Of a DNA stretch of 64,000 nt, positions 371 to 63,670 are shown piece after piece (within the stretch, counting starts at the first letter, position 1; each line of letters opens with the position of its first letter). Where the stretch lies: the IMG/VR virus record IMGVR_UViG_3300042326_002445, positions 1 to 64,000 of that record; one strand, given 5' to 3'. The translations under genes were made by a program, and so were the position numbers. Under the pieces are notes generated by a model, which was given only the letters and a program-made list of their open reading frames with translations, was not told the origin of the DNA and searched no databases.

Positions 371-3300
371 ATGTTATCACCAGTAATAAAAATAAACAAA
401 TTTGATTCTAAGTCTAAGACTATAAATGCTGTTCTTTTGAATCTAGATTCTAGCAAAAAATATAGACTTGATTTTTCTAATTTAAATTTTGATAATATAA
501 ATGATTCAATTTTTCTATCTTCACATAGTGTATCTCAAATAGAAAATTTGTCTGAAATATCTTTTTCTTATAAAATATTAAGAGATGAAGACAAATTCTT
601 ATACTGTCAAATATATGAGTGGGATCTTGATGGCTGGAACGCTTCTCATGTTGCTACTGCTGTTGTAAAAGAAGATGAAGTTTTAGAAAACAAACATCTT
701 ATTATTGACCCATTATATGTTAGTCACGAAGATAAAATTAATGCTCGTATAAATGGACTACCTAATCATAAATATGATGTAATTATTGGCAAAAATAGTT
801 TTACTATTACTACTAATTCTCGTGGAGTTGGGTCTTTGCACGTTAATGCTATCAATGTAGTAGATTACAAAACTTTTTCTCAAAAATTTGTTCGTAAGTA
901 TTCTTGTAGTTTAATTGATAATGAAACAAAGCAAACAATAGAAAAATCATACTTTGAGTTTGTGCCTGAAAATATGTATGCACTTGCAGCTACTAACGAT
1001 CCTAATAGACCAAGCTGTGTAATATTAGATCCAGACCCTATAGCTGCATTTTCAGTATCTACGGAGCCATTTGACGCTCCATGCTTTTCTCAGCCTTTAG
1101 TTGGTTCTCTGTTTACTTCTGATGGTTCTTTGTATAGTGAATCTACTAGGCTTGAACCGGCTTATAAAAACTGTAATGATGGCTATGTTTCTTCCGCCAT
1201 TTCTGTTGTTAACTCTGCATGTAAAATTTACAATAAACCCAAGTTTGCTGTTTTGAATACATTTGATGAGCTTGCCAAAAGCAGAATAGATAGTCTGTAT
1301 TCTTCTGGTGAATCACAGTTGCCTAATTCTGTTTTTATTCATAGAAACATAGGCTTTGTTTATAGTTCTTGTGATGAAAATGCATCTGATATAAACAATC
1401 CGATAGACCCATGCTCTTTTGCTTCACAAGAAATAAAAAAAATACCAAGAATATTTTTAGGATGTACTACTGGTTCAAATAAGATAAAAGTTCATAGTCT
1501 TGCTCGTGGAGTAATAAAAGCTCCTCCCGCTTATTTTCACAGTGTACTTATTGGGAAGCAGGGGGAAGACGATATTGAATTGCAAGACGGAGATGTAGTA
1601 AACATAGTTTTTGATTTGTCTAATGGTTCTAGGATATCAAAGTCGCTAGAATATAGTGAATCGAATCATGGTAGTATAGAGGCTTTTGTAGAGGCTTTGT
1701 CGTCAGAGATATCTTCAGACTCTAATATAGTTGATGCTGATATTTCTGTACGTCAATATCCAAATTTAAAGAGAATAGATTTTACCTCAAATACAAAATT
1801 TATTATCTTTGCTGGTCAGGTAAACTTTATTGATCCAAACACTGGAGACTATAAAAAGAATGATAAGATTTTGGTTATAAGAGATTCTAAATATACATTT
1901 GATTTTGAAATAACTAATCCATCAGATTATGATGACATTTTAAATGTTTTAAATTCTGGCGGAACTCATATGGTCTTTTTGGACGGTCAATTTAAAGGTC
2001 TTGTCGTTTCTGTTAATAAGACTTCTCAGAGTGGAGTTATAACTTTAGATACTTGCCCACGTGTCAGTAAAGAAAGAAGAGGACTTGGTTCATTTATTGT
2101 TGCAGAAGACACATATTGCGTACATGTAGCTTTCATTAGCAAAGACGGACTTATTCAAGAGTCAGATTCTACAGCAATAACTGCGTTACCATTTTTAAAA
2201 AATGAATTTAATGAAGTTGTACCGTCTTCTCACCCATGCATTACCTCTAATGGGCATGTATTTTGCCAGGGCTTAGTGAGCGGAAAATGGCAAATATTTG
2301 GATATTTTCCTGGCCTCACAGACTCTTCATGGATTCAACTAACAAATAATGGGGAAAACAGAAATCCTAGTGCAGCTTCTGATTCCGAAGGGAATATTCA
2401 TCTAGCGTGGGAAACTGATAGACTTGGCTATACAAGTATTCAGTACGGTTGCATCGGTCCTTCGGCCAAGTTGATTAATAGGCTTGCCTTATCCGGTTTG
2501 ATATCCAAGCAGTTATCAGATGAATTGGTGTCAAAAATATTCAATGTCAGTCCACTTGGTGACAGTTTAAACTTTGTAGAATCAGAATCTGTAAATATTA
2601 ATTTGTTACCAGAATTACAATTAAGAAGCTTAAGATCTGGAGCAGAAATTGGTGGTGGCTCATTTAAAATTATTAGGGAGTTTACTGGCAATATTCGATT
2701 AGATGAAGATCAATTTAATCAGCTCATCCTAGTTCCTTTATCTTTTAATAAATTTGGCTCTATTCGATGGGCTGATGGTATTCCACCTATATTTAATAAT
2801 GGGACTTATTGCACAAGTTATATTGTGCATTTTCAGCAAAATGGCACTGGATCTGGAGAAACTGTAACAAATAATTTTTCTGCAAGATTTAATGGTAAAA
2901 TATTAAGAGTATTTTTAGGTCCTAGTCAGATGACAAGGTCAAATAAAGTTTTTGCTTCTGATGAAATAATATATCCTGTTGTCTCTGGTGATCAATCTCC
3001 AAGCTTTATTGAAAATTTAAATATCGTATCTGGATCTGTAGAAATTTCTGGTGATGGAAAAACTTTAATTTTTTCTATTAATTATAAAGACGCTTTAAAT
3101 ATTGGCCCTATGCAATTAAGAGTTTTAGTTGAAGGAGTTAAATCTCAAAGTTCTGTTGACCAGTCAAATTGGAATAGAATTTTTTCTAACAACGGTAAAA
3201 TAAGTATTGTTGAAAATTCTCAAGTGTGCATAGAGGCTTCTCCTAAGTATGATTGTGCAGTTGCCGCATTATCCGTATATGAAAACGAAGCTGGAGTTTC

Positions 3301-6300
3301 TTTTGATGGTCAAGAAAAAGAAATAAATTTATCGATTCACGCTGATTGTAGTATAGGTCCTCCTGAAAATGAATATGTAGAACCAATTGGGAATGCATCT
3401 GAAGCTATTTTTGATAATTATCTTTCATTGATTGAAAGACTATCAAATCCATTTAATGTTTTTAATGATTCGATTATATGGTTAAAAGAATTTTCTGGAG
3501 AACCTGGTTTTTCACAAGGCAAACAATTCGCTTCAAATTATAGAGACACAAATAATAATTTGATAGTTTCCTTTGAAAACCAATCTAATCGTTATTTTAA
3601 TGGATTTACAAATAACGATCATGTAACATCTTTTACCTTATCTTTTTACTTGCAATCATCGGACATTAACTTGACTAAAGAAATAGCTTTTGGTAAAGAA
3701 ATTTTGGCTTTTTATATTAGTAGAAATGATTTAGAGAATACAGACACAACACTTGGAAAAGGATCTGCTAATAGAGCAAATTTGATGGAAGACGGTGCAG
3801 TAAAGGTAGTTGTAAATAGTGCGCGCAATAAATTAGTATTTCAAATTCCGTCTAATTCTTTTGTAGATTTTACTGTGCGCGTAGTAGTTGCTTCTCAAGA
3901 TTTCTCAAATCCATTTATTATTAAAGACGCGAAAGAGGTTGATTCATTATTTGTGAAGTTCGTTGATCAATTTGTTAAACAAAACGACTCTTCTTATTCA
4001 TTTGATGGCAATAGATTCTCTATTGCTAAAACAGACAAAAGATATGATAGTCTTATTCCTATGCTTGGAACTTTAAGATTTGATGACTTAAATATTAATC
4101 CCAATGCAGTATCTGCTAATTTTACTAATCTGTCTACTATACAGTCTTCTATAGAGGATGTAGATACTTTTTCTTGTTCTGACATCGTTTCTATAGGCAC
4201 ATACGAATTAGTCGATCAGTTTAATATTGATGGAAGCAATAGCCATATTGGGCACTGTTATGTTGGGATAATACCTGAGAGAGTGTCTTTTATTGCTAAA
4301 AACAATGAAACACTTGACGAATATTCTTCTAGGCGTGGTTCTGTTTCTGGATACAGAGAAGCAATAATATCAGATATATATACTGGTGTCGCAAAAGTTT
4401 GTATTATTATAAATGGCGCATCTTCTGCTGGTAAAAATACTTCCTTTGCAAAAGGAACTGTATTTGCAATTTCTGACTATGCCAATATAGATATATCAAA
4501 TAATTTTGCTTTACAGTTAGATGTGAGCTATTTAAGATTAGGGAAAAATGATAAAGATTTAATCAATAAATGGTCTCATGTCTCAAGTGAAGCATTTTAC
4601 CAATCCTCAGAATATAAATTAAACTATCATTTAATGTGCAATGTTTTTATAAACAATAAGCCTGTTATTTCTCATAATGCTCAGATAGATTTAAGTGATA
4701 AAAATAGACAATGGGAAGTTTGTTTTGGAACACCTTTCGGTCTTTACCCTGTTTGTAGGAACGGAGACTCTAGTTTCCTAGATTTTATATCATCTACCAA
4801 ATGGGAATTAAACTATGATCATATAAGAATAGGAAATCCAAAGGTTTCTATTAATAATTCAATTTCTGAAATATCTTCTTATGTTTATTCTTTACCTGCA
4901 ATATCTAAGCCAGTACCTAACTCTGACTCAAGTACAAAAAATGAAATTTTTTCAGAATCTCTTATTGATCCAGGAGACTGGGTATGTTTAGAAGATAGTA
5001 GTCTTTTAATAGATCAATGGTCTGCAGAAAATGGAGGATGCGTATATGTTGGCACATATGCTAAATCTGCAAATGGATTTAAGTCTGTATTGCTAGAATC
5101 ATCTGTGGTGTATTCACAAAATATTGTAAATTTATCTTATAGACTTTATCCTCAAATAAAAACAAGAAGAGGCCGTGTTTCTACTGGGCAAGGTGGTGGG
5201 GTTTCTCAAACAGCAGGTACTTTATACCCAAATGATAGCCATAAAATATATATGACAACGGGTGTAAGGCAAGTCCCAGAAAATCTTCCAAAAATCACAA
5301 AGTCTTTATTTGTTCAATGTGATTCTGAAGTTTTCACTCATAGGCATGATGTTATTTCTGGAAGTTTTAACAATAGTTTATCTTCTTTAAATTATAAAAC
5401 TTTTAGATCAGAGTTTATTCCTAATAGCTCAAACTTTGACATTAATATAAGAAATGTTTCCGATAGTCTTAGCTCTTGTTTTTCTCATTTTTATATTAGT
5501 TATAATAGTACAAGTTGGATATCTGGGTTTACTGGGCCACTTAACCATACTAATGGCTCTACATATGGAGATTCAATATTTTATATTAATCAAGATGGAA
5601 CACTTAATTTGTATAGAGGCTATAATTTATCTGGAAATGTTAGTTCAGAAGATATTGTGTTAAATCCAGACGATCCTTTACAGGTTATTGCTGTAGATTC
5701 TTCTTTGCATTTTGATACATCTACAAATCAAAATGATTCTGCAATTGCTGTAACTCATGATGGATATTTGACAACGTTTACTTCAGATGGTTCAGAAACG
5801 GACATTCCATCGTTTATGTATCAATCAAATTTGCCATCAGACAATAATTATGTTAATGTCTCAGTTGGATGGACTCATGGATGCGCAATTAAGAAAGATG
5901 GTAGCGTTACTTGCTGGGGAGATGATACTTATGGTCAAGTTAGCGGCCAGCCTGCCAACACAAAATTTGTACAAGTTAAAGCAGGCAAGTACTTTACAGT
6001 TGGTCTTAAAGAAAATGGAGAAATTTCTGTTTGGGGACGTGACAACCACGGACAAATTTCTAATAAACCATCAGGTAAGTTTGTCAAAATTGATACTAGC
6101 GCCGACCATGCAGTTGCAATTGGCTTTGATGGGTATCCGGTATCTTGGGGAAAAAACGTTGGGTCAATGTATAGTGTTTCTGTAAGAATTACCGATCCTC
6201 AAACTAAGTTTATTGATATTGCTGCATGTGGAGGTGATGTGTATAATTTGGATACTTATTCTTCAAGTTCTCCAGGTGCTTCTGTATTGACTTCTACTAA

Positions 6301-9300
6301 TCCATTTAATGTTGGTATTGATGTAGATGGAAATATTGTTGCATGGGGGCCATATTCTACTGCATTTACTCCTACAGGCAGAGAGGGTTCGCATGCAGTG
6401 CCTACAGTGCCTTGTGTGGCTGTAAAGCGTGGTATAAAAAACGCACTTTGCTTGGGCGTAGACGGTAAAATATATTCTTATGGCATTTCCTACACCCCTT
6501 CTGACCCTTCAATTGCAGATGCACCATCAAACGTTTCTTCAATTTATAAAACAGATATAGATTTTATATCAGGAGGCGTTTTTGTTAGTAATATTGACAT
6601 TTATCCAATTGCTAATTTAGTAGAAGAAGACGTAGATGTAGATAATTTTAGACTATACGGAATGACTTCTAATAATGAATTTTTGGCATCATATGGATTG
6701 CCATATCTTACATCTTTAAGTGGTGTCCCTTTGGTTTGGAAAAATAATGATTTACAAAAATCTCCGTTTTGCATAGTAGATAAATTTGATAAATTCAGTG
6801 TTGTTTGGGAAGATAATGGAAGAGGTCCTTGGGGCATATCCTTAACTTCCAATATTTGGCTAAATCGTTTCTGCACAGATAAAGTTTATCTTTCAGACAG
6901 GTCTTATTCTGGGATTAATCCATCTATATCTACTGACTCCTCTGGTAAGCGTGTTGTTGTTTGGGAATCTGTAAAAGATGACAATCATTTAATAGAATGT
7001 GCGTCTCACATACTGCATCCTGACTATGTCTCAGAATGTGATGTTGACAAAATAGTAGTTTCAAGTCGTTCTCTGGGTGTAGATATAGATCCATACGATC
7101 CATATAACGTTGAAAAATCTTTAATGTCTTGTAAGGTTGAGGTTTCATTTACAGCACCAGAATTTGGAAATTATTTTTTTACAGTTAAATTTAAAGATTA
7201 TAATAATGATAACATTATTTATAAAATGGCGTCTTCAAGATCAGAGTCTGGCAAATGGTTTATTAACGGTCTAAATATACCGTATAATGGACAGGTAATA
7301 GCTCAGGGAGAAACTGTTGTATTATCTTATGTTCCAGATGCAAATGATGATGTTTTTAACAAAGTTTTAAAAGTTGAAATAGACTACAGTATAGAAAATG
7401 AGCAAGAAGAAATATTTATTACTTATAAAGCAAATAGTATAACTGATGGTAGAGGAATCGGTTGGTGGGATGCTCCTTCAAGGCCATATCCCATAGAAAT
7501 TAAATCGCCTCCCCCAATAGATTTTTTGAATGAATTTTTAATTTTTGACGAATTTTCAGGAAATTCTCCTATTGCTTTATCTGAGCAAAGATCGTCGTAC
7601 TTTGAATCAATTGGCTCTGCTAAAGACGTTAATTTTATCTTTCCAACTGGAGTTTCCAGTTTGCCTGGTTTTAGTGCAGGAGAGTACGTAAAAAGCTTTT
7701 TGCTTGTTCTTGGAGATGATGGATTGACGAGCAATAACGTAGTAGAAGGAACTCTTACTTTTAGCTCTCCCATCGTTGCAGTAATTATAGATTCAAGTAA
7801 CTTGAAATCTACGGATATATATTTTAATGATTCGTCAAGACCAATTAATGTGCAGAGAAAAAATATAGTATCAAACTTTCAATTTTATCAAGGAGAATAT
7901 ATAAAACTTAGTGAGGACAGAAAATCTTTAACAGTAAGATTTAGGCAGCCACGCAGAGCGTCTTGGCCTTCTGTCCCAGGATCTAGTTCATCTAAAAAGC
8001 CAGGTGCTGTTATTGCAAATGTTGAAACAATTGTGAGCGACGTAATAGTTTCAGCAAAAGAACTTCCCGCTTCTTTGGTTTCAGATTCTGGATCGTTAGT
8101 ATTGTCGGATGCAGACGCATTCGGAACTGTTAGCCCTCTTGCTTCTGCTTTGGGAGCAAGCGAGAGGCCTTTTGGTAGTTTAAGAATAGTAGTTTCTAAT
8201 AGTGGAAGTGCTGTTGGTCAAATATCAACAACTTATTTTTGCGCACAACCAATATTTAATTCATGCAAGATAAACATGTCTTATACTAATCAGTCAACAG
8301 AAGTTAAAAATGTCCACTTTAAAGTTTCTGTGTTTGCTGATGCCGATTATAAAGATTCATTGCTTGTTTTTAGTTCGTCGTCTGATCCAAGAATGTGGTC
8401 AAGTGGTAATGACGTATACCCATCTGCAGGTATTGGTGCAGCTCCTAATGCAAGTGTATCTGTTAATTTTACACCACCTATTATAGATGTAGAAAATTTC
8501 CAAGTGCCAGTAGATAGAAGTTCGGTAAATGAGCAAACAAGAATTGCCGGGTATGGCAATTATTATAATTTATCGAGATCCTCTCTTATATGTGGAGTGA
8601 AGTATTATGTAATATTAGAGGCTATTGTTGATGGAAATTATTCTGAAATATCAAGAGGGTCAATATTGTGTCAATGTCAAAATGAATTGGCTTATAAAGA
8701 AGATTCTTTTGATTGGAGAAGTCCATTGAACGGATCTAAAAATACTAGAATTGCACTTTCTCCATACTACATCGGTCACCCTTATATTTATGGCGGGAAA
8801 GATGGTTTATTTGCCATAGTGTGGGAGGATAGCAGAAATTCTGAAAGCACTTATGGAGTTATAAACCGCAATATACAAAAGTCAGATATTTATTGTGGAT
8901 TTTTTGATTTAAATAAAGATGTGATAGAATCTTCATATCATGGAGGTGTAGATAGGTTGCTGATTAACACATCTAGTTCTTCAGATACCGCCATCACTGA
9001 CCACAGAATGCCTGCAATTGTTGCAGATCATTTTGGTAATTTTTCTTTATTTGCAAATATTGGTTACAACAAAATAATTAAAAGATATTTTAGTGTAGGT
9101 CAAAAAATTACACCAACTATTGTAGAAGAATCTGCTGTTACTAAAGCATGTTCATTCACACTGACTGACATATCAAGTTATGCTACTGCCTTTGATGGCG
9201 GAGAGTTTATGCAAGCAAGAGTATCTGAGCGTTTTGTAAAGTCTTACAGAACTATTGCTGCATCTAGTCCTGCCCCAGTCGTAAATGATTGTTTTGTGGA

Positions 9301-11736: not shown

Positions 11737-11739
11737 TTT

Positions 11740-14700
11740 ATGCAAATTCCAAAATCACAATTTAGGGTAGACCGTCGTCCAATTGCTCGCATCATATGCG
11801 ATCCTATGTCCTTTGCAACTGTACCCTCTCTTGCATACACTCCATGTCCAGATTTGAATAGGGATGGCGTCGTGGACGACCTAGACTTGGCTATAGTGCA
11901 AGAGAATTGGGGAAATAACCCTGGTCATCCGGCAGATCTTGACCGTAATGGAGAAGTTGATGGGCTAGATGTGGGCATTGTAATTACCAATTTCGGACCT
12001 GCTAGATGTGTCCCTAATGTTGAAGATTTGTGCAACATAGTTAAAACAAGGGGATTGGGTCCTGCCTTCTATGGGCCTAATGGCTTTAAGAATTTCTTTA
12101 ATAATTATTTAAGCAGATTATATGACGCTGGTTTTAGAAGATTTTCTTTGCAATGCCCTTCTGGATGTCATCTTAATACAGAAACTCACAATTTATCCAG
12201 TAATATTAGAAATACATTTGATAATTTGCAATCTTATTATTTCACTACATTATTAGAAGAGTCTGGCGCTTGTTCTGAGGATTCTTTGCCATTTGACGTA
12301 AGCAATCTTCGCTTAGACGACAAAATATATGCAAGTTTTTATGATTCTTTTATTGGCCATTTATCTTATTGGACAAGAAGTCAACACGAGTTTGTTGAAG
12401 TGAATGTAGAGATGGGGTCTAAGGTCATATTTTCAAATAGTGAAGTAAATCTTGACGTTTTAAGTTTACCACAGGATGATTTTATAAATATAGAATCGGA
12501 TTTTAATATTAATTTACCTGCTCATAGAATATGGCTTGAATATAATTTAAATGAATTTTTTGCTAATGGTATTTCTGGAGTAGGTTTAAGTAATTGTAAA
12601 TTGTCTCTATTGCAAAATATATTAAACTTTAATAACATTAATGATGCTGTTTGGAAATTGTATGGTGCATATTTTATGCACGTTAACATACCTAATATAA
12701 ATGGAGAACTTTTAAACAGTAATGAGTATTCTAATTTTAGAATAATATCTAATTTTGATAATCCTTTTGGATTTACTAGTCAGAATATGACACGTCTTTT
12801 CGGTGGTTTAAGAATGTTTGATAAAGGAGCTGAAATACACAGTTCATTCAGTCTCAATGATATCTCATCTTATTCCCAGGAGGAACTAGATGAGATGGTG
12901 GATGATTGCGGGTTTATTCCTGGAATTCAAATCCCGTATTCTATTAATATAAATTCACTAAGTTTTGACAACATAGTTTCTCAATTCAATAAAATATCAG
13001 CATCGGTGGAATATGCAGAAAAGAAATCGAATGAAAGATTATTCGGTAAATCTCTTTTCTTTTTTAGTGAGTCTGCAGGGGAAGCAAAAGATTCAAATGG
13101 TGCAACCAGTGTAAGTAATTCTTATTTAAGATCTTCTGTAAAATTTGACGAGCGTATAGTGCCAGTAATTAAAGTAAACTGCTCTAAAAATTACAAAAAT
13201 ATTGATGAAAGCATATCTAGAACATATGTCCCATCCTGGTGGTTTTCTAATCGTCCAGAAAATTGCATTGACACATCTATGGTGGATGAAGTTGTAAGTA
13301 GTTGGACAATTCAAAATTCTGACGATATTTTAAAAGTAAATAACTCTAGTCCTTATGGAACTTATGGTCCAGAAAAATGTGCTGATGCAGCTTTTGATAT
13401 GATATTGCAATATCAGAGTTCATATAATGGAGTGGACAGGGCTAATATAGATTTTGAAAATCCTAATAACGTAGCCATTAAGCTAGAAAATTGGGGAGAT
13501 CTTTTTGACCATCAATGTACTCAGGAAAATTTAGATGAAACCTTATCTCAAGGCTGGTGTAGACTTTTTACTAATTCATTAGATCAGATTTTTAGCTATT
13601 TTGATGAAGACTTAGATGCAGAAAGAAAGCCGATTGACAGACTTAAAAATCTGTATGCCAAAAATGGTGTTTTTGAGTGTTCAGTGTGGACAAAAAGATT
13701 TATTGAAAGATTTAAATATAGGCAGCATAACAGGAGGGCATATGGGGGGCTCAGTATAGTTCCTAATCCTCGCATAGTATACATTGATGAACAATCCGTG
13801 TTAGCTCCACATGATTTTATAAATTATATAGGTGTAGAATCAGCAAGTGATTCTGAGTGTTTAGAAATTGGAAGCTATTTTGGTTCATGGCATCATCATT
13901 TCAGTGATGAAAGATTTAGGGATGTATCACAGGGTTTTGTTTGGAGAAATTATTTAACATTAAAAGACGCTTACGATTACGCATGTCAGTCTAGCGAATT
14001 TAGTGTAAATCGCATGTCTGAGAATTCAAACAATATTATTGGTCAAATTAGTGTTAAAGATTACAGTAGGCAGGATAAATCGTATGCATATTCAGTTCAA
14101 GACAATGCTGCTATGGAAAAATGGTTGCAAGTTTTAATTGACGAAGTTGCTAGTAGACGCATTTATGAAAGTTTGGGCATTCATGTAGAAAATGCTTTTA
14201 CAAATGGCAGGTATGCTCAAAGAGGTTTCGCTTGCGGTATTAATAACAATCTTTCTTATTGCAATGTACAGGCTCCATTTTATTATTTTGTTAATAGGTG
14301 GCATTATTACAATGGTAAGCATGATTTTAATTTACCAAAAACTTCTAGTTTTCATATTAATCATGTTTGCCCAACTTCAATCGCAATAGATGATGGAGTT
14401 AATAATGCCTTATTTGATTGGGAACCTAATTTTGATAATCGTAAAGTTAGGTTTGAAAGTCTAGAATATTTTAATAGTTATAGTAATAACAATCAAGTTG
14501 AAATGAATTTTGGATGGAGGCCTTCTTATGAAAACGCTCCTGATGGAAGAGGTACGTTCTCTTATGGTGCAGGACCTACTGGAGATCCAGAAAGCGATAT
14601 AGTATATGGAGACATACATAGATCAAATATACAGATGCTTTTACAAAAAAATCATACTAGGTATGCTCAATATTTATTAAATACTATATACGCACTCAAT

Positions 14701-18137: not shown

Positions 18138-18138
18138 A

Positions 18139-34377: not shown

Positions 34378-35285
34378 CAATTAAAGTGAACATACTGGGC
34401 ATAGCAAAAAACTTTGATTACGTTTATTTTGATGTTAAGTCAAATGCTATTAGCATATATGATTTAGTCAAGCTATCAGAAAACATGTATGTTAAAAAAA
34501 TTATTATTAAAAACTGGAACAAAAATTATATCGCATCTAATTATAAAATATTAAAGCGATTGCAAAAATCTGTAGTTTTACAATTTTCTATTTTGGGCAC
34601 ATCTGCTGACGATATTGCCGTGATGCAATCATTTTTATCAAAAGAAGACTCAGCTTTAAATGTGACATCTCTTGATGTAGACAGAACTATTTTTGTTCCT
34701 GAATGGGTCAGTCAAAACGGAAATAAGATTATTTGGGATAGTAATTTGCTTAATAAAAGCTTTTCATTCACAGTTTCTAAATATGTAAATCGATTTCCTA
34801 ATTCAGTAAAAAAAGTTATATTATTTCCAAATAATCCAGTATCATTGGAGCGCATGGATTTTAATTTATTAAAAAACATGAATGGGATGGACTTAAGCTT
34901 TATATCTTCATATGCTGGTCTTTTAGTATCTAAATACGGAGTAGACACGATATGGCCCATATCTGTTTCTTCATATGAAGAAATAAATGATATAGCGCCT
35001 TTGCTGAGACAATACTTTAATTCAATGAACATATTGAGCGTAATGATTGTATTTAGCAATAATATCAATAAGTCTAGTCTAAGTTTAGAAGAATATTATG
35101 CTATATCAAATTTGGAAAGATATGTAAACGTATACTTGTATGGTGTGCCAGTCGATAAGAGTGGGACCGTCACTTTTGATACAGACAGGTTTAAATGGAT
35201 ATCTGATGTAAAATATGTTAGTAGTTTTAAAAACGGCGTAGATATTTATAATAAAAATAATATCAATTTTATTTTGTTAAAATGA
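34374..35285 (+). CDS. Hypothetical protein (303 aa)
   Basis: GTG start overlapping the upstream TGA; no motif recognised. Confidence 0.65.
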   Translation: MTIKVNILGIAKNFDYVYFDVKSNAISIYDLVKLSENMYVKKIIIKNWNKNYIASNYKILKRLQKSVVLQFSILGTSADDIAVMQSFLSKEDSALNVTSLDVDRTIFVPEWVSQNGNKIIWDSNLLNKSFSFTVSKYVNRFPNSVKKVILFPNNPVSLERMDFNLLKNMNGMDLSFISSYAGLLVSKYGVDTIWPISVSSYEEINDIAPLLRQYFNSMNILSVMIVFSNNINKSSLSLEEYYAISNLERYVNVYLYGVPVDKSGTVTFDTDRFKWISDVKYVSSFKNGVDIYNKNNINFILLK

Positions 35286-35292
35286 TTTTGTC

Positions 35293-42716: not shown

Positions 42717-42727
42717 AAAGGAAAACT

Positions 42728-45079: not shown

Positions 45080-45082
45080 AAT

Positions 45083-46789: not shown

Positions 46790-46879
46790 AATAATAAAAT
46801 TTATACGAAATATATATGTATATTCATATAAATGGTATCATCAGTTTATTTTAAATATATGCTCACCCGTTAATAATAT
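46790..46879 (+). promoter_or_regulatory. AT-rich intergenic region, candidate promoter (TACGAAATAT at 46804; TATAAATG near 46827)
   Basis: Largest non-coding gap in the window; shares an exact 10-mer with the gap at 63671-63733. Confidence 0.4.
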
Positions 46880-49800
46880 ATGGCTTACATAATTAACTAT
46901 AAACCTAATTTACATGACCTGTACACCTATGGGTCTCAGCCGATTATAGATCCTAGTAATTGGCAAAATAATAGAAGAGTATATCCAACTGGTTATAATC
47001 AAAATTTATTTATTAAAGATCCATTTTATAATTTAAATTTTAATGTTGATTTTAGCGGAATGGATCGTGAAGGTAGGGGTGCTCCTGGTTACGGATTTAA
47101 TCAATACGAAGGTCAGTCTGGGTATCTACCATCCGGTGTTTTGGTAAATTCTGGCAGTGGATCTGTTACTCTGCCTAGCATAGCTGGCCAGTTTAGGTCG
47201 TTTGGCAACAATGCAGACTGCTACCATTTAGGCTGTCCTGTTGGTAATTTTGAAATAGCTTCTAATTATAATCATTGGAATAATGGAGCATGGGCAAAAG
47301 TCTTGATTAGCCCAAAACATTTTCTTGCAACAGCACACTATGTTGGTTCTGGCAACAACAACACTTCAATACGCTTGCTTGGAAAAAATAATCAAGTAGT
47401 TACTAGAAATGCAACAAAGCTTATAGACTTTAGTAATTCATCTAATTTTCCACCTGGATATAATTGGCCAAATTCATCTTTTGATTATACTTTATTTGAA
47501 TTAGACACTGCTCTTACAGAGCAGGAAATGCAACAAATTAAAGTTTATAAATTTTTAAATGCATTTAATTTGCCAACAAGTGTTCCACTTTTTTATGTTT
47601 CTCCTCAAAGCGTTGTATCTGTACTGAATTCTTTAGGAAATGATTATTTTAATATAAATTTGTATCCTGATGCTGCATATAGAGGCAGTTTAGTTTCCGG
47701 CGTTCCAACGCAATCTACATTTAGTGTTTGGGTTGGCGACAGCGGGACTCCAGTGTTTGCTTATGTTCCTGGTATTGATGAAACATGTTTTTTATACTCT
47801 GCTTGGGGTGGAATGACGATATCAGACAACGGCAATACTGCAAATCCAACGGCTACAAAAAAATGGTTTGATGCTTTAAAACAATATATTTTTGATAGAA
47901 TCGGGTACAATATTGGCTTAGTCAATTACTCTACTACCGGAGGCGGCAATTCGTCAAGCAGTAGCTCCATAGGTAGTTCAAGCAGTAGTTCAAGCAGTAG
48001 TTCAAGTAATGTTGACTCAGGTTTGTGGATGCCCATATCTTCTGATAATCCGTTTGCAAGGAATATCGATATGACTTCCGATACTGACTCTCCTCCTATA
48101 GCTCGTTGGTCCAGTGTTCCATTGCAGTGGATCCATGATGGTGAGTCGGTAAAGGCCTCCGTTGTCGCCTATCACTCTACAGGAATAAAGCGTGTAGATT
48201 TTATATGCGATGGAGGAGAGTACGAATCTGGAGCTCATATTATAGGTGTTATAAATCCGGTTGCTGACTCTAGTTCTAAGCAAGATGAGTATGCTTGCAG
48301 TATAGATATAAATGATTCTTGGTCCGAGGGAATACACACAATAAGAGCTATTGTTTATGCAAATAATGGGACAAAGAGAGTACTTCAAGGTTCTTGGTTG
48401 CCTAAATATAGTAGTATATCTGATCCTTATAATTATTTTAATAATGGAGAAGTCGATTTTACTTTTATTGTTAATCGTGGCTCTTATGATGGCAATACGG
48501 TATATGTAGATGCGGTTAATGGAGATGATTCGAATAATGGTTCTTTTAATAGCCCATTTAAAAATTTATGGAATGCGATTCCCGCAGCACACGCATTTCA
48601 TTTAGAAAATTCTATTAAAGAAGATGTGATTATATGCAAAGCTGGAGAGTACAGGCTAAGTCCATTGTTAAATGGTGATTATTCTTCTGGAACTCCATCT
48701 GCACTTGCTTTGGGTGCTGGAAGAATAGGTTGGTTAAAAATAAAAGCGCTGGATGGTTTAAGTAAAAAAGATGTCGTAATTACAAATCGTTCAACTAATT
48801 TTGGCAGTGTTGCCAATCCGACGAGCTATGCTGTAAAATCAAATACTTTAGTCTCTAGGTTTACTGTCTTTGAAAATATAACATTGGAAAATTTCTATGA
48901 CAGTAGTACAAATGTTTCGGGAGAAAAAGATTACATTATTTCTACTGACGGTTCTTATGGATTTGATTCTAGAGGTGTGTGGTTAAACAACTGCTCTATT
49001 AGAGGACGCTCAGGCGTCTCTGTTGATACTCTAGTATCTACTTTGAACAATCAAGTTAATATTTTTTTTAAAGCATATCCGGGTATTGCTCAAAATGTAG
49101 TTGGTTTTGCCACTAATTGCAATGTAAATAGTCTTTATAGAGGATTTGACGGTTTTGTAATGTTAAAGCAATGTGGAATTGGTAATACTGTAGAGTTTGC
49201 AATTAAAAATTGTGCTTCAATTTTCTCTTGCAATATATCTAATGTCGGCAATGTTGGTGCTGTCGCAGATTCAGCTGTCATTAATTTTAGCCATACTTCA
49301 TTGGCAAAAAGTAACATTATAGTTGCAAAGAATCAGATTAATAAATCTGCTATATCTCATTTTAGGATTAATCCACATCGTAACGTTTTTGATTCAGAAA
49401 TTTACTTTGAAGGTTTTGCAATTGTATCAAATTATTTTTCTAGAGCTACTGGAGGTCCAGGTAAATCATACATATATAATGGTATAAAGCAGATTTTCAT
49501 GTCACACAATAGTATGTTAGACTATTTGTCTATACATGATGCTAGTGGTGGAGTTTGGGGCGGTGATGTCTTAGTCTCAGACGTGTATTGTAAAAGTAAT
49601 CTGCTCAATGGGATTATTGTAGACTCTACTTCTGGTTCGTCTGCGTCCCTTGGAGCAGGCTCTGTCGCATTAAATCAGGGATTTTTAAATTCTAATTCAG
49701 AAATATCTTCCAATATATTTTTATTACCAACTCAGTCAAATAATCCGTTATTTTTATCATTAATTGTTAATGATAAAAATAAGCAAGTTAATCAAAGTGT

Positions 49801-52800: not shown

Positions 52801-55800
52801 TCAGGTTCAAATGAAAAACGAACAGATTATCCCACATGTTGGAATTTGCGTTAATCAAGATTCTCTTAAAATTTCTAACAATAATGAATTTGCTAATTTA
52901 CTTAATGATTTACAATCTCAGCCGACTTCATTTAACGTGATTAAGATTAGATTGGTGTGCGGCAATTCCTTAGTGGAAAGCGAAGTAGTTGCAAATACAA
53001 TATTTTCAGAGCTAGAGAGTCATGCTCGATCTAATCCTGACGCATATGACTGGTTGCGAAACTGTATTGGAGAAATTGGATATCCGACTTCTCACACTTT
53101 GTTGGGATTTTTAGAGTCTACTGAAGTTAACCCTTGTGGTAATGGCGATTTTTCTATAGGTGGAATTGTCATTCAAAATGAGGGGATTTGTACTATAGCT
53201 TCTAACCTGCCATCGCTATCTTCTCTTTATCAGGAAGTTAATGCTAATAGCGCATGCGAGTGCGAAAGCTCTTCAACTTACAAGATTTATGCTTCAAAAG
53301 CAAAAATAGACAGATCTTTAAATCCTGATGATGGCTCTTCTTGGGCAAGTTTTGTAGAAAATGAAATATCTTCTGTCTCAGACATATCAAATGGTTTGAT
53401 GCTTTTTATTAAACCGGTAAGTGATAATTCAAGTATTTACTACAATATTGACTCTAATGGCATGCCAATCATAGATGGTGTAGTAAAATATATTTCTGAT
53501 ATAAATGACGCAATATTTAATTACACTTTAGGCGAGAAAGACATCACAGATTACTATGCGGGTGTTGTAATAGATTTTAATCACTTATTTAACATAAACG
53601 ATAATCAGAGCTCCCTACACGCCTACGCTTGCTCGTACCCATTTACAATAAATTCGCAGGGTTCAGATTCTTATGATAATGTTAGAAGAGCAATAGCTTA
53701 TGTGAATGGTAATTTGATAGCACTGATTAATGCAATTAAATTTATTAATCAAAACATTTCTGTATCTATTAGAGGTCTTGGAAGAATTAATGACAGTGAT
53801 TTTGAAGAAAGCATGACATCTAAAACTCCTTATTCTGCCATTAATTGCACCCCTAATGCTAGAAAAGAATTGAGTAAAAGAGTATCTGAATTTTATGGAC
53901 CTTTGTTGGAAGCATGTGACTTTATTTACTTGTGGAACGGGAATGAAAGTGCAGAGCCTGATCTTTCTTCAGCTCTTGATTCGGTCTCTGCATCAAAGCT
54001 AAGACTTTCATGTTTGGTTAAACATTTTGAATATAGACAAGCAGATTGTCCATCTATATTTGTTGAAATTAATGGAGTTCATTTATCTTCTGACGGTTTA
54101 GGTCAGAATGATTATTGTAAAGTTTCTAATGCAGAAATTATTAAAGAATCTATTGATCCTTTTACCAACAAAAACATAGATGGGTTTGTATATTATTCAG
54201 AGCAAGAAAACATAGAAAAATTAATTTTTGAAAATTGTCCCATTTCTATTTCTAATCCTGAAGTATATGGTGCAGTAAATAGCTGTTGGGACTTGTCTAT
54301 AGATGGCTGCTCAGATCAGTCCACATTGATTGATGTTTTTGAGACTTCAATATATAATAATATATCATTTATTAATTCTTATATTAATAATACTAGCAGT
54401 AATCTTTATGTTCCATTAATTATCATGATTGGAGAATCTAATTCTGGTGGTTTGGCTAGAAATTCTCAAGCATTGCCTGAAGAACTTGGTATTAGACCAG
54501 AAGTAAAGATACTAAATAATTATACTTTAAATTTTGAAAATCTTAATATTTCGTCAAGTGGAAACAATATATTAGATCATCGTGGTCCGAATGGCATACC
54601 AGATGTAACAGATTCTGTATGGAATAGCAATGGAGGTTCTCCTCATGGCTGGGAGCTGGGTCTTGCCAATGCAGTTAGAGATAAAATGTTCTCTAGGGAT
54701 GTTGCATATCTCATCAAGGCTGGTCACGGTGGGTCTAAAATAGGAGATGACAGTATACCTGGAGATTGGGACACTTCAGGAATTTACTGGAACTTGTTCT
54801 TGCAAAGATACTCTGCAGCAATTTCGGAACTCAATGTTGACGGGTATTCTCCTCAGACATATATATGGTACGAAATAGGAATTAATGATTGCATATCAAA
54901 TGTTAACGTTGATCAGTGGAAAAATAAATTAGTACAAAAAATTAATAATATTAGATCAGTGACGGGAGTAAATTCTCCAGTATTTATTACTTTGCTGCCC
55001 GATGTAGCAAAAACTGGAGATTTAACTGATAGCATATCTGATTTTAATAATGCTATATTAGAAATATGTGTTGATCAACAGCTAGTATATTGGGTTAAGT
55101 CAGATGACGCTCATTTAAGATTCAACGACATATATCACTGGGATTACTATGGAATGAAGCTTATCTCCAGCAGAATGTCTAAGCTCTCTGCAAATACGAT
55201 AGGAGAAGGCGGAAATTATGTCGTTAGTCTAGATAACCCGCCTTTGCAGCCAGATTATTCTGATTACAGACCAATTGTGGCTGCTGTCCCTTATAATGAA
55301 GAACCTGACCCAGTACTTGAGTTCGTATATCCAGTATTCACGGTGAGAGGAAGGCTTTCTGGAGGTCCTACTTTAGATGAGCCAGGTACAGGCCCTACTC
55401 CAAGCCATATTGGTAATCCATCTGATGCTATTGGCTTCTTTAATGCCAGAGGAATACCAGCAGTAAAAAGATTTGTATTTTATTTTAATATTGGATCATC
55501 TACTTTTGACGGCGTATTTGCCGATCCAATTTACAATCAAACTTATGATAAATTATACAATCCTGCAGATAGTTGCATAAATGTAAATGGGGAAATAGTA
55601 AAACAAGACACTTTAGATCCCAGAGAAGGATCAAATCCAACTTTTAGAGGAAATCTTCCTTTTATATCACCATGGACGCTTGGAGCTAACACAAGATTAG
55701 AGCAATTTACCAGACAGTGGGTTGCAGAATATAAAAACTTGAATGGAAAGATATACGGTTTTATATCAGATAATGAGTCTTTAAATCCAACTGGATTTTG

Positions 55801-58800: not shown

Positions 58801-61800
58801 TGATGACTCAGAATTTAAAGAAAAGTTTCCATTCCCAGTTGCTTGTGGATCTATTTTAGGAAATTACTTATATAATGCTGCTGGCTTTACTGGAAGTTGC
58901 GATTCTTCTGCAAATATAAGTGTTGAAGACATTGCATTTAAAATCCCAACATTTGGCACCATATTCACTCAAGACATAAAAAATACCGTTATAGAATATC
59001 ATGCTTTTTGTCACAATTTAGCTAATACAAATATACTGTATTTGCAAAGTAAAATTAACGAATACTATGGATCTAGAGTAAAGGCCATAATTCCTCACGT
59101 TGAAAATGATATATTTTATAATTGGAAGTCTTGTTTAAGCGCTGAGATTTCAAATTACTCTAGTATTGTTAGTACAAATTCAGGAATTGAAAAACAAGCT
59201 CGTTCAAGGAGAATCCAAAATCCCAGCGCAGCTAGTAATACAGTAGATATACAAAGACCTGGCGCTGCGACCGTAGAAAATTTTGGACTTGACTTACTTT
59301 CATCTGCAGATGGTAAGAAAATTATTGTCAAGAAAATTCCAAATATACTTAGATACAGAGACACTGATTTTAGTAGCTTGTGGAATGAATTTGACAATGT
59401 TAATTCTACTAATATAGTAGAAGATGGCATCGTGAGAGAGGATGGCATTAAGGGCCATTTGGCTTCCTGTGTATTTGACTACATGCGCGCCGGTCATATT
59501 GTTATGTTAGATATGCCAAGCTGGAGTACATATAAGGATGATGGAGATACTTTATCAAATTCTTATATAAATAGCGACCCTCCCAGAAATGATATGCCAT
59601 TTATATTAAATGTCATAGATCTCAATAATCAGTTGAAGCAAAACGTATCTAGTTTATATAGACAAAACAAGCATGCTTGGATTGGTATACATTATGCAAA
59701 CAGAGCAAGAAAGTATATTCATGTATCAGATGCAGTCTCTTCAAATGGTCAAGAGTTTTACAGTGACATTAATCTTGACCTTTCTCGCTATGGCTATTCT
59801 GGAAATATGACAATAGGAGAATTTGCGTGGCCAATAATAGGAGCATACGAAACTTGCATATACAGTGGAATTTCTTCTGCAGTTATTAATGATTCTAGTT
59901 TAGAAAATGGTGATTTTTCTAGTCTAAAATTAATAATTATTCCGCATAGAAAACTTCTTAATAGTTTGCAAAAAGATAAGCTCAATCAATTTGAGGGTTC
60001 TGTAATTTATTTAGAAGATTTGTTGAGTCAAACAGGAAATCGCTGGTATAGTACGGCAAGCGATTTATCTGAATCCACGCCCGATTACGTTACTTTATAT
60101 AATTTGCTTTCTTTGCGGATCAAGAACTTAGTTGGCAGTTCTCCAATAAAAGTAAAATTAAATGTTGACAATTCTATAGTGACTGATTCTGGTAAGTACT
60201 TTTTGAAACCATCAAGTGTTTTTGACGCAGGCTTAAATAGCGATGTGCATAGAATCGTCGTGTGTGTTTCTAATGATAGAAATTGGGCTGATGTTAGAAA
60301 TAATACAAATGAAAATGGCATTTTTGGATTGACATCAAGAAACAATGATTTGTTAAATACTCAATCTGCTAATCAAATTTTCTCTAGTATTTATAGTAAT
60401 GACTCATTCTATGCAGATGGCTCTTATCCAGTTTTGGGTCAGTTTGCATATTATGCAGGAGATCCTCCAGCTGGATTTGGCAAAAGTTTCTCTGTATTTA
60501 TAACTTTCAACAATTATATATCTTTGGTGTCTGCTAAACAGATATCTTTAAATTTTGCTGATAATACTGTAGATAGTAAAGTTGTTTCTTGGTCTAACGG
60601 CTCAAGCGGTCAGTCAATATCTTCTAATTTTATATCTGATTTTTCTTGGTTTGAAATAGAATTTAAGTACGAAACGCCGCCTTCTAGTTCAAGCAGCAGT
60701 AGTTCAAGCAGTAGCAGTAGTTCAAGCAGCAGTAGTTCAAGCAGCAGTAGTTCAAGCAGCAGTAGTTCTAGCAGCAGTAGTTCAAGTTCTGGGTGTGTTG
60801 TTTGGACTGGTCCTGGCTGCCCGGACATGGATGGTGACGGGTTTGTTGGTGGTGCAGACCTTGGAGTATATTTCAGTGCTTTTACAGATTATAACCCGAT
60901 TGCTGACTTAAATGGAGATGGCGTTGTTAACGGAGCGGATCTTGGTATTCTTCAATCATATTGGGGTTCGTGCGTCGAATGTCCTAATTGGAACGGTAGC
61001 AGTAGTTCAAGCAGTAGTTCAAGCAGTAGTTCAAGCAGTAGTTCAAGCAGCAGTAGTTCAAGCAGCAGTAGTTCAAGCAGTAGTAGTTCAAGCAGTAGTT
61101 CAAGCAGTAGTTCAAGTTCTGGGTGCATTGTGTGGAATGGTCCTGGCTGCCCGGATGCAAATCAGGATGGAGTAGTAAATCAGTTTGATTTCGACATATT
61201 CTTGGCTTCTCAAGAAGAGTATAATCCTATTGCAGATCTTAACGGTGATGGTTTCGTAAATGGTAATGACATAGGTGTTTTACTTTCTTTTTGGGATAAT
61301 TGTGTTATATGCCCTAATTGGCCTCCTAGTTCTTCTAGTTCTTCTTCTAGTTCTTCTTCTAGTTCTTCTAGTTCTTCTTCTAGTTCTTCTTCTAGTTCTT
61401 CTTCTAGTTCTTCTTCTAGTTCTTCTTCTAGTTCTTCTTCTAGTTCTATTAATTTGTTTGGGGTTTTAAATACAAGGTCTGCTGTTGGGCCAAATCAGCC
61501 TTCATGGTGGTCTACTGCAAATGTGCATTTTCAATCCTTTAATCCATATGCAACGATCAAGCAGATTTATGAAGGCAATATGGAGGAATCTGCTTCGGCT
61601 TTAATTGAGCCATCATTATTGCTAGCATACGACAATCCATCTTCTGGTTGTTCCGTAAGGCCATATTATAGTTCAAGTCCAAACGGATATCCGCCTGGTT
61701 ATGAATTTGTTTATAGGTCAGAATATAATTGGATTCGAGTTGAAGGAAGTAATTTTAAGGAAAGATTTAATAATGGGCTTAATCGATGGTTTAATCCTGA

Positions 61801-63670: not shown

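What the first reader, a model, noticed from the sequence alone, without database searches (positions are those of the whole stretch)
371..63670. Multiple modules point to a Planctomycetota (Phycisphaerales) host or donor despite low GC
Several motifs resemble, from my recollection of protein families, surface proteins of planctomycetes: the C.ADLNGDG.V.GADLG.LLG.WG dockerin type, short RCC1 repeats, the IARW..VP.Q...VVA.H..GI.RV.F module (48092-48386), and the S[YF]...F...I....L..[ST]D...[LI]S.D.K.L...LRV domain seen in PVC FecR/PEP-CTERM proteins. Those bacteria are typically GC-rich while this DNA is AT-rich, implying old capture and amelioration by a virus. Planctomycete phages are barely characterised.
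Basis: inference. Interest (0 to 1): 0.75.

Follow-up and report, generated by a model that had tools for sequence, protein, structure and literature searches.

The report
Lake huge phage carrying Phycisphaerales-type dockerins
The window is a block of giant fibre-like genes from an AT-rich huge phage of lake water, and two of its small modules are of a kind otherwise concentrated in GC-rich Phycisphaerales bacteria, which makes that group the likely source of the modules and a plausible but unproven host.

Summary
The window is the first 64 kb of a 223.6-kb virus record from lake water, 34.7% GC and rated about 55% complete. It holds 14 co-directional genes of up to 5,596 aa.

The dockerin motif passes NCBIfam's GC-type dockerin model, folds as a dockerin, and shares the flanking cysteines of the planctomycete form. 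In a scan of one genome per prokaryote species, 63 of the 79 best loci were Planctomycetota, 41 of them labelled Phycisphaer*. Single Phycisphaerales genomes carry tens to over 200 copies.

The IARW module is an Ig-like domain ahead of a beta-helix glycanase. It matched 23 of 121 Phycisphaerales genomes and 0 of 222 Pseudomonadota and Acidobacteriota genomes. RCC1 is enriched but widespread.

So the Phycisphaerales link is real at module level. These modules are only about 4% of the window's protein. They have phage-like codon use (GC3 0.33, against 0.85 in the bacteria), so any capture is old.

Nothing tested ties the phage to a host. The five lake MAGs checked have no Cas1, the lists of best-holding runs for the phage and for a candidate MAG share no run, and the GC gap is about 30 points.

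Verdict: partly supported.

The parts
371..10231 (+). gpA, 3286-aa giant protein. Only its RCC1 part has recognisable homologues.
   Evidence: ORF list; Pfam; weak PHROG 'tail protein' hit, E 1e-4; in 101 Phycisphaerales genomes only aa ~1784-1953 of aa 1-3000 match
5801..6484 (+). RCC1-type beta-propeller repeats in gpA (aa 1811-2038)
   Evidence: PF13540 58.8 bits, cut-off 22; nearest ESM-atlas clusters have scattered taxa; 22/101 Phycisphaerales against 3/101 Pseudomonadota
11740..17070 (+). gpC, 1776 aa, with dockerin pairs at the N-terminus and three tandem pairs separated by poly-Ser
   Evidence: Dockerin_1 87.1 bits in 4 stretches, plus EF-hand hits; sequences
11815..12024 (+). N-terminal dockerin pair of gpC (aa 26-95)
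15079..15651 (+). Three tandem dockerin pairs of gpC (aa 1114-1304). They are a simpler form without the outer cysteine frame.
18139..26565 (+). gpE, 2808 aa, with no recognisable family except a weak BNR_4 hit
   Evidence: no match in 101 Phycisphaerales genomes
26565..32114 (+). gpF, 1849 aa, with a weak match to central tail fibre J
   Evidence: phrog_31, E 5.6e-8, aa 104-208
32114..39030 (+). gpG, gpH, gpI and gpJ (212, 541, 303 and 1245 aa), candidate baseplate proteins without family matches
   Evidence: no Pfam or PHROG hit; for gpH the atlas gives only viral clusters, one of them Baseplate_wedge, at a weak score of 0.73
39030..46789 (+). gpK, gpL and gpM (1228, 783 and 568 aa): paralogous fibres with shared N-termini. 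gpK ends in a Laminin_G_3 lectin-like domain (42186-42677).
   Evidence: local all-against-all BLASTP; Pfam 47.6 bits
46880..63670 (+). gpN, 5596-aa multi-module protein: poly-Ser, Ig-like domain plus beta-helix, a weak SASA-esterase-like region, two GC-type dockerins, and a 740-aa tip
   Evidence: Continuity across 60742-61418 is not confirmed by independent assemblies.
48098..48385 (+).
   Evidence: atlas features point to Big_7; AlphaFold model strands 31-126 with pLDDT about 90; family consensus
48458..49624 (+). Right-handed beta-helix, glycanase or tailspike-like (gpN aa 527-915)
   Evidence: AlphaFold model; Foldseek best hits are GH28 exopolygalacturonase, GH136, rhamnogalacturonan lyase and chondroitinase B, with P22 and CBA120 tailspikes lower down (E from 1e-5)
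54419..55177 (+). Weak SASA-type carbohydrate-esterase-like region (gpN aa 2514-2766)
   Evidence: PF03629 22.8 bits, just under the 24.8 cut-off
60683..61447 (+). Poly-Ser linker, GC-type dockerin 1 (60791-60994), poly-Ser, GC-type dockerin 2 (61121-61324), poly-Ser
   Evidence: AlphaFold pLDDT 94.8 and dockerin fold; 60763-61027 is 97% identical in DNA to 150.2 kb of the same contig

Best explanation
The window is the host-adsorption gene block (baseplate and giant fibres) of an incompletely assembled huge lake phage. The giant proteins are strings of modules joined by poly-serine linkers. Two module types belong to families centred on Phycisphaerales. The first is the GC-type dockerin. In those bacteria it is the extreme C-terminal tag of tens to hundreds of proteins per genome. 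The second is an Ig-like domain plus beta-helix glycanase family. The modules were most likely taken from that lineage long ago, directly or through other phages, because their codon use is now the phage's own. Proposed mechanism (inferred, not shown): the calcium-binding dockerin pairs, displayed on flexible poly-Ser tethers, latch onto the same still-unknown cell-surface partner that holds the bacterium's own dockerin-tagged proteins. The beta-helix and esterase-like domains then cut surface glycans, and the RCC1, Kelch and LamG domains add binding sites. On this reading Phycisphaerales are the likeliest present host, with a phage-host GC gap of about 30 points.
For: It is a phage: the tool classes it as a virus record, and the contig carries a replication module with split DnaE-type polymerase, UvsX, DnaB, clamp and clamp loader. 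Fibre block: 14 co-directional genes with touching or overlapping ends, a J-like hit in gpF, shared N-termini in gpK/L/M, and a beta-helix glycanase fold. Dockerin: Pfam and NCBIfam scores over their cut-offs, true dockerins as best PDB profile hits (2y3n_B, E 2e-15), a model at pLDDT 94.8 whose top structural matches are dockerins, and the planctomycete cysteine frame (C-P-x-D ... W-G-x-C) shared in the alignment. Taxonomy: 63 of the 79 best loci among 185,579 species genomes are Planctomycetota, 41 labelled Phycisphaer*. One 2.7-Mb Phycisphaeraceae genome gives 96 matches. First-look candidates reach 100-220 per genome in the order. Each of five lake MAGs gives 31-55 matches to the phage's own profile, against 0 of 120 other Pseudomonadota. 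IARW module: 23/121 Phycisphaerales, 3/151 across the phylum (two of these are Phycisphaerales), 0/121 Pseudomonadota and 0/101 Acidobacteriota (Fisher p 9e-12). Phycisphaerales rows lie in most clades of the family tree. Old capture: module GC3 is 0.33 against 0.27 expected from phage codon use and 0.85 in the bacteria, and the phage clade sits on a stem of 1.66 changes per site. Same ecosystem: the run that best holds a lake Phycisphaerales MAG locus also holds the phage at 1-4x. The phage tRNAs read its commonest AT-rich Ser, Asn, Thr, Gln and Tyr codons.
Against: The phage is 34.7% GC, while every bacterial locus carrying these modules is 47-74% GC. There is no CRISPR evidence: five lake Planctomycetota MAGs have no Cas1. 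The 24 best runs for the phage and the 14 lake-water runs that hold the MAG locus best share no run. The shared modules cover only about 4% of the window's residues, and gpE, gpN aa 701-3700 and the gpN tip have no homologue in 101 Phycisphaerales genomes. In the phage the dockerins are internal, not C-terminal. No Pfam cohesin was found in four Phycisphaerales genomes or in the phage contig, so the partner is unknown. The one neighbour of the phage's IARW clade whose gene neighbourhood could be read lies on a phage-like contig of 54% GC; another lies on a 3-kb contig of 43% GC. IMG/VR holds dockerin-like modules on contigs from 30% to 62% GC, so phage-to-phage spread is possible. Control phyla were limited to those reachable; Bacteroidota, Verrucomicrobiota and Cyanobacteriota were not sampled genome by genome. 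The tail assignment rests on weak PHROG hits.
Confidence: 0.5

Rival explanations
1. The present host is a low-GC lake bacterium from another phylum. The Phycisphaerales-type modules are old passengers that move among phage fibre genes and say nothing about today's host.
For: The GC gap is about 30 points. The modules are fully phage-like in codon use. The phage IARW clade has a long stem, and its one neighbour with a readable neighbourhood is on a phage-like contig. Dockerin-like modules occur on IMG/VR contigs from 30% to 62% GC. The best-run lists do not overlap. Most of the giant proteins have no Phycisphaerales homologue.
Against: Two unrelated modules point to the same order. No low-GC genome appeared among the 79 best dockerin loci. 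None of 50,697 deposited phages has the module, so it is not a common phage currency. From general knowledge, phiKZ (about 37% GC) on Pseudomonas aeruginosa (about 66%) shows that such a gap can occur.
Confidence: 0.35
2. The dockerin pairs work inside the virion. They plug fibres into a cohesin-like partner on the baseplate or on other fibres, as in a cellulosome, rather than binding the host.
For: gpC carries a pair at its very N-terminus, where fibres usually attach to the particle. Several different giant proteins carry the same module. One copy was recently duplicated within the genome.
Against: No cohesin family match was found in the 224-kb contig or in the Pfam scans of the window. Most copies lie deep inside or near the distal end of the proteins. 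The module is of the host-lineage type rather than a phage-specific one. Only about 55% of the genome is in hand.
Confidence: 0.2
3. The resemblance is convergence or chance: short calcium-binding D-x-N-x-D-G loops recur in many proteins.
For: The module is only about 60 residues and loop-dominated. Calmodulins also score with the profile. gpC's tandem copies lack the cysteine frame.
Against: The scores pass curated cut-offs. The flanking Cys and W-G positions are shared with the planctomycete form and absent from the proteobacterial hits. The profile finds 31-55 copies per lake Planctomycetota genome and none in 120 control genomes. The fold is a dockerin. A second, 240-residue module shows the same taxonomic bias.
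Confidence: 0.04

Closest known systems
GC-type dockerin domain-anchored proteins of Phycisphaerales (NCBIfam NF041540)
   Same: Same duplicated loop-helix sequence (ADLNGDGVVNGADLG.LL..WG), same cysteine before the first loop and W-G-x-C after the second, and a score over the curated cut-off.
   Different: In the bacteria the domain is the last 50-60 residues of 300-1600-aa proteins. In the phage it is internal, doubled in tandem, bracketed by extra cysteine pairs (GC..W.GPGC ... C..CPNW) and poly-Ser, and encoded with AT-rich codons.
Cellulosomal type I dockerins (Pfam PF00404) and cohesin-dockerin assembly
   Same: Sequence family and fold. The best PDB matches are cellulosomal dockerins solved in complex with cohesins.
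   Different: No cohesin was detected in the phage contig or in four Phycisphaerales genomes. The setting is a virus particle gene block, not a polysaccharide-degrading complex.
Phage tailspike and depolymerase proteins (P22 tailspike, CBA120 TSP3, Klebsiella K1 lyase) and bacterial beta-helix glycanases (GH28, PL6, PL9)
   Same: gpN aa 407-915 is predicted as an Ig-like domain followed by a right-handed beta-helix, with these as structural matches.
   Different: Sequence identity is about 10%. The nearest sequence family is unnamed in Pfam, and two of three looked-up members lie beside polysaccharide-synthesis or glycosyltransferase genes. Here the domain is one bead in a 5,596-aa protein.
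phiKZ-like jumbo phages, as a precedent for a large phage-host GC gap (general knowledge, not tested here)
   Same: A very large genome that is far more AT-rich than the proposed host.
   Different: The replication genes here are DnaE-type and show at most 37% identity to any deposited phage. None of the 30 mid-size proteins scanned against PHROGs matched an RNA polymerase, and phiKZ's other hallmarks were not searched for; half the genome is missing.

Membership tests
Dockerin (Pfam PF00404) | Profile score over the gathering cut-off | tested here: met
   gpC 87.1 bits and gpN 28.9 bits against a cut-off of 22.9
Dockerin (Pfam PF00404) | Two calcium-loop plus helix repeats folding as a dockerin | tested here: met
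   AlphaFold pLDDT 94.8 with helices at 21-29 and 48-56. The 17 best Foldseek matches are dockerin or cohesin-dockerin entries, the best being 2y3n_B at TM 0.71/0.80 and rmsd 1.1 A.
Dockerin (Pfam PF00404) | Binds a cohesin partner | tested here: not met
   PF00963 was not found in the phage contig or in four Phycisphaerales genomes. Binding itself cannot be tested with these tools.
GC-type dockerin (NCBIfam NF041540) | Score over the curated cut-off | tested here: met
   44.2 bits against 29, in two stretches
GC-type dockerin (NCBIfam NF041540) | Cysteine before loop 1 and W-G-x-C after helix 2 | tested here: met
   Alignment A3 of 5 phage, 21 planctomycete, 3 viral and 3 other sequences. gpC's three tandem copies lack this frame.
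GC-type dockerin (NCBIfam NF041540) | Located at the extreme C-terminus of the protein, as an anchor tag | tested here: not met
   The bacterial copies end 0-15 residues before the stop. The phage copies lie 780-3900 residues from either end, or at the N-terminus of gpC.
Phage of Phycisphaerales (host assignment) | CRISPR spacer or other physical link | not testable with these tools
   No Cas1 in five lake Planctomycetota MAGs; no spacer database is available.
Phage of Phycisphaerales (host assignment) | Composition similar to the host | tested here: not met
   34.7% GC against 47-74% GC
Phage of Phycisphaerales (host assignment) | Shares lineage-specific genes or modules with the host group | tested here: met
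   Dockerin type and IARW family
Phage of Phycisphaerales (host assignment) | Co-occurrence in samples | tested here: inconclusive
   One run holds both, but the lists of best runs do not overlap.
RCC1-like beta-propeller | RCC1_2 repeats over the cut-off | tested here: met
   gpA 58.8 bits; the neighbouring gene gpO has a full propeller at 179.5 bits
Beta-helix depolymerase or tailspike | Right-handed parallel beta-helix fold | tested here: met
Beta-helix depolymerase or tailspike | Catalytic residues and glycan-cleaving activity | not tested
   No active-site mapping was done; identity to solved enzymes is about 10%.
Tail or baseplate module | Matches to known tail protein families | tested here: inconclusive
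   Only weak hits: phrog_31, E 5.6e-8; phrog_13857, E 1e-4; a Baseplate_wedge lead at 0.73

The most novel reading that the evidence does not exclude
A huge phage of about 400 kb and 35% GC infects Phycisphaerales of 60-70% GC. It adsorbs by mimicry: it displays the host's own dockerin anchor tag on poly-serine tethers, so that it is captured by the receptor that holds the host's 50-200 dockerin-tagged surface proteins. This would be the first described adsorption strategy for a planctomycete phage and a second, unrelated case of a phiKZ-scale GC gap.
Probability: 0.3. Interest if true: 0.8.

Novelty: new variant of a known kind. Interest (0 to 1): 0.6.

Why it matters
Planctomycete phages are almost unknown, and Phycisphaerales are common in lakes and seas. 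If modules in fibre genes can name a host where composition-based methods would point elsewhere, that is a useful caution and a useful tool. The work also exposes an unexplained feature of the bacteria themselves: tens to hundreds of dockerin-tagged proteins per 3-Mb genome and no recognisable cohesin. The phage modules are small, soluble-looking baits that could be used to fish out that unknown receptor.

Tried and rejected
2. A single-protein scan of IMG/VR with the polymerase found no relative.
3. The first alignment, A1, was too diverse for the genome scan, so the five cysteine-framed modules (A2) were used instead.
4. tblastn of the dockerin region against 50,697 deposited phages gave no match.
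5. The word-based protein search with gpN aa 377-1100 returned a single fragmentary relative.
6. Look-ups of distant IARW homologues gave unnamed metagenome contigs, so their taxonomy could not be tabulated directly.
7. The CRISPR route failed: no Cas1 in five lake MAGs.
8. The lists of best-holding runs for the phage and a lake Phycisphaerales MAG do not overlap.
9. An exact 30-mer next to the repeat found no second IMG/VR assembly to confirm gpN's continuity.
10. Replication proteins give at most 37% identity to phages of scattered hosts, so they carry no host signal.
11. Literature searches for GC-type dockerin, dockerins in tail fibres, and huge phages of Planctomycetes gave nothing specific. 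One preprint reports lake phages predicted to infect Planctomycetes, but its tables are not held.
12. Rejected reading, recent transfer: module GC3 is phage-like.
13. Rejected reading, assembly artefact for the whole block: both flanks of the repeat are held at equal depth in three runs.
Full report
WHAT THE WINDOW IS

The 64-kb window is the start of a single 223,646-bp contig of 34.7% GC with no terminal repeat. The tools class it as a virus record, linear, with a CheckV completeness of 55%. Its DNA is held almost word for word by at least 24 lake-water metagenome runs released between 2020 and 2024.

Downstream of the window lies a phage replication module: a DnaE-type polymerase split into two ORFs, a UvsX-like recombinase, a DnaB-like helicase, a clamp, a clamp loader and an exonuclease. 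No terminase or HK97-type capsid family is found in the contig. That fits a genome of which only about half is in hand.

Replication proteins are at most 37% identical to any of 50,697 deposited phages, and the hosts of those phages are scattered.

The window holds 14 co-directional genes with touching or overlapping ends, and it encodes 21,052 residues. Four of the genes are giants of 3286, 2808, 1849 and 5596 aa. Three more giants follow up to 84.9 kb, and another three lie at 127-153 kb.

Evidence that this is the adsorption apparatus is indirect:
- gpF has a match to central tail fibre J.
- gpA has a weak 'tail protein' match.
- gpK, gpL and gpM share N-termini, as fibre paralogues do.
- Part of gpN has a beta-helix glycanase fold.
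- gpK ends in a lectin-like LamG domain.

Most of the protein sequence matches no Pfam, PHROG or NCBIfam family.

CHECKING THE OBSERVATION

Three of the four motifs are there.

Dockerin. gpC has an N-terminal pair and three tandem pairs. gpN has two pairs at aa 4638-4705 and 4748-4815. Further copies sit in the genes at 63.7 kb and 144.9 kb. Each of the five 'framed' copies reads GC.VW.GPGCPD.NGDG...DYNPIADLNGDGVVNG.DLG.L..W..C..CPNW and is set between poly-serine runs of up to 41 residues.

RCC1. The repeats lie at gpA aa 1811-2038.

IARW.

Fourth pattern. It could not be found with any relaxation I tried.

WHAT THE MODULES ARE

Dockerin. The copies pass Pfam's cut-off, and in gpN they pass the cut-off of NCBIfam NF041540, 'GC-type dockerin' (44.2 against 29 bits). 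A profile of phage and bacterial copies finds true cellulosomal dockerins as its best solved relatives (2y3n_B, E 2e-15). An AlphaFold model has pLDDT 94.8 and two loop-helix repeats. Its 17 best structural matches are dockerin or cohesin-dockerin entries.

IARW. The stretch is an Ig-like (Big_7-type) domain. It is followed by a right-handed beta-helix whose structural neighbours are glycoside hydrolases, polysaccharide lyases and phage tailspikes.

WHERE THE MODULES COME FROM

Dockerin, global scan. It confirmed 142 relatives and kept 79 loci. By their record titles, 63 are Planctomycetota:
- 41 labelled Phycisphaerae, Phycisphaerales, Phycisphaeraceae or Phycisphaera
- 7 Isosphaeraceae
- 5 Planctomycetia or Planctomycetaceae
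- 10 labelled only to phylum

Of the remaining 16, 14 belong to other phyla and 2 are unnamed.

Dockerin, position and frame. In the bacteria the domain sits 0-15 residues from the stop codon and has the form C-P-A-D-L-N-G-D-G ... W-G-x-C. The phage copies share both the leading Cys and the W-G-x-C. The proteobacterial hits share neither.

Dockerin, copy numbers:
- One 2.7-Mb Phycisphaeraceae genome has 96 matches to NF041540.
- An even sample of the phylum has matches in 4 of 151 genomes, three of which also appear in the Phycisphaerales samples.
- Within the order, many genomes show 30-220 first-look candidates.
- The phage's own profile finds 31-55 proteins at E <= 1e-6 in each of five lake Planctomycetota MAGs.
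- It finds none in 120 Pseudomonadota genomes other than the one picked because it had a hit.
- No deposited phage has the module.
- IMG/VR has five other contigs with weaker relatives, at 30-62% GC.

IARW family (gpN aa 377-700):
- 23 of 121 Phycisphaerales genomes match.
- 3 of 151 genomes across the phylum match; two of these are Phycisphaerales.
- 0 of 121 Pseudomonadota and 0 of 101 Acidobacteriota match (Fisher p 9e-12).

An exhaustive HMMER search of 1.84 billion representatives gave 199 hits. Three are fragments of close phage relatives. The rest are 500-1000-aa proteins at 30-38% identity.

The 20 planctomycete homologues I fetched (19 Phycisphaerales, one other) are 625-1658 aa, lie on DNA of 55-68% GC, carry no C-terminal dockerin, and share a C-terminal motif with the metagenomic hits. 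Of the 147 distant hits, 114 align to one of them over at least 60% of their length.

In a tree of 130 rows, Phycisphaerales sequences lie in most clades. The phage clade is monophyletic on a stem of 1.66 changes per site. Of its nearest neighbours, one lies on a phage-like contig of 54% GC and another on a 3-kb lake contig of 43% GC.

RCC1. The part in gpA matches 22 of 101 Phycisphaerales genomes and 3 of 101 Pseudomonadota. The two queries differed in length, so the E-values are not strictly comparable. The nearest ESM-atlas clusters are Myxococcota, Bacillota, Verrucomicrobiota and Planctomycetota. RCC1 is therefore not diagnostic.

Stretches without homologues. gpE, gpN aa 701-3700, the gpN tip and gpA aa 1-3000 outside its RCC1 part have no homologue in about 100 Phycisphaerales genomes each. 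The shared modules are about 4% of the window's residues.

AGE OF THE LINK

Every bacterial locus with these modules has 47-74% GC. Third-position GC is 0.85 in 30 planctomycete dockerin modules and 0.33 in the nine phage modules. The phage's own codon use for the same amino acids predicts 0.27. Only a small excess is left, so any capture from a GC-rich donor is old.

Inside the phage the module is still mobile. A 265-bp stretch of gpN is 97% identical in DNA to a copy at 150.2 kb.

HOST

Nothing tested here links the phage physically to a cell:
- The five lake Planctomycetota MAGs I could reach have no Cas1.
- The best-holding runs for the phage and for a lake Phycisphaerales MAG locus are all lake-water metagenomes but do not overlap.
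- The run that holds the MAG locus best does also hold the phage at 1-4x, with no mismatches in its listed pieces.
- The six credible phage tRNAs read the commonest AT-rich codons of its most used residues, Ser and Asn among them. That would help in a GC-rich host but proves nothing.
- From general knowledge, phiKZ (about 37% GC) on Pseudomonas aeruginosa (about 66%) shows that such a gap is possible.

MECHANISM (INFERRED)

In Phycisphaerales the GC-type dockerin tags tens to hundreds of proteins per genome. There must therefore be an abundant, conserved partner at the cell surface. It is not a Pfam cohesin.

A phage that hangs the same tag on flexible poly-Ser tethers could use that partner for first, reversible attachment. 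The beta-helix and the weak SASA-like esterase would then work on surface glycans. The rival mechanism, dockerins as plugs that assemble the fibres on the particle, is not excluded. gpC's N-terminal copy fits that rival best.

CAVEAT ON GENE STRUCTURE

Short-read contigs from three runs cover both flanks of the dockerin and poly-Ser region at equal depth (13-14x). They all break between 60,742 and 61,418, and no second IMG/VR assembly was found. gpN as one 5,596-aa gene therefore rests on the original assembly.

VERDICT

A Phycisphaerales origin of two modules is well supported. Phycisphaerales as present host is plausible (about even odds) but unproven. The remaining bulk of these giant genes is without known relatives.

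Noticed in passing
window 60763-61027 and L006:6160-6424 (contig 150160-150424): A 265-bp stretch covering one dockerin module is 97% identical in DNA between gpN and the giant gene at 144.9 kb. This looks like recent intragenomic copying or gene conversion. Short-read contigs break here.
   Followed up: partly
window 60683-60790, 60998-61120, 61328-61447: Poly-serine linkers of 36-41 residues are written with a periodic mix of AGT, TCA and AGC codons (unit about AGT TCA AGC AGC AGT). They are slip-prone, and they account for the AT-skew dip at 60-62 kb.
   Followed up: partly
L009:8032-8123 (contig 206032-206123): ARAGORN calls a tRNA-Ser with the unusual anticodon ACT, which would read AGT, the commonest codon in the poly-Ser linkers. 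It sits in a cluster with tRNA-Asn, Thr and Tyr. The anticodon call was not checked by another method.
   Followed up: partly
window 10364-10447: ARAGORN's tRNA-Val(cac) lies inside the gpB ORF in very AT-rich sequence and is probably a false call.
   Followed up: no
L003:7192-10486 (contig 97192-100489): The DnaE-type replicative polymerase is split into two ORFs of 450 and 650 aa that overlap by 8 nt. Both match the same PHROG (405) end to end.
   Followed up: partly
G001, G046, G073, G168, G212 and other Phycisphaerales genomes: Genomes of about 3 Mb carry roughly 100-220 candidate GC-type dockerin copies, yet no Pfam cohesin was found in the four genomes tested. The partner of this very large tag family is unknown.
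   Followed up: partly
L001:734-8494 and L002:984-12878 (contig 63734-84881): The next giants carry a complete RCC1 propeller (179.5 bits), a pectate-lyase-like domain and a dockerin (gpO), and a Kelch propeller (gpQ). The fibre block therefore runs on to 84.9 kb.
   Followed up: partly
L035 (DAIEHA010000007.1, labelled Candidatus Parcubacteria): A 44.5-kb contig with 59% GC at the sampled locus, carrying a C-terminal dockerin pair, sits in a 0.7-Mb 'Parcubacteria' MAG. It may be mis-binned.
   Followed up: no
window 1-369 and contig 171863-205649: The contig starts inside a gene whose product reads like a GT1-type glycosyltransferase (the motif was recognised by eye). A 798-aa ORF at 171.9 kb has glycosyltransferase hits. 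About 30 unannotated ORFs of 200-340 aa follow at 177-205 kb.
   Followed up: no
L122 (logan:SRR31374329 contig, 44.6 kb, 54% GC): This phage-like contig carries NAPRTase and PRPP-synthetase-like genes, and fibre genes with fn3, CHB_HEX_C and GDSL-lipase domains. Its 953-aa protein is among the nearest neighbours of the phage IARW clade, so it may be a related fibre module in a GC-richer phage.
   Followed up: partly
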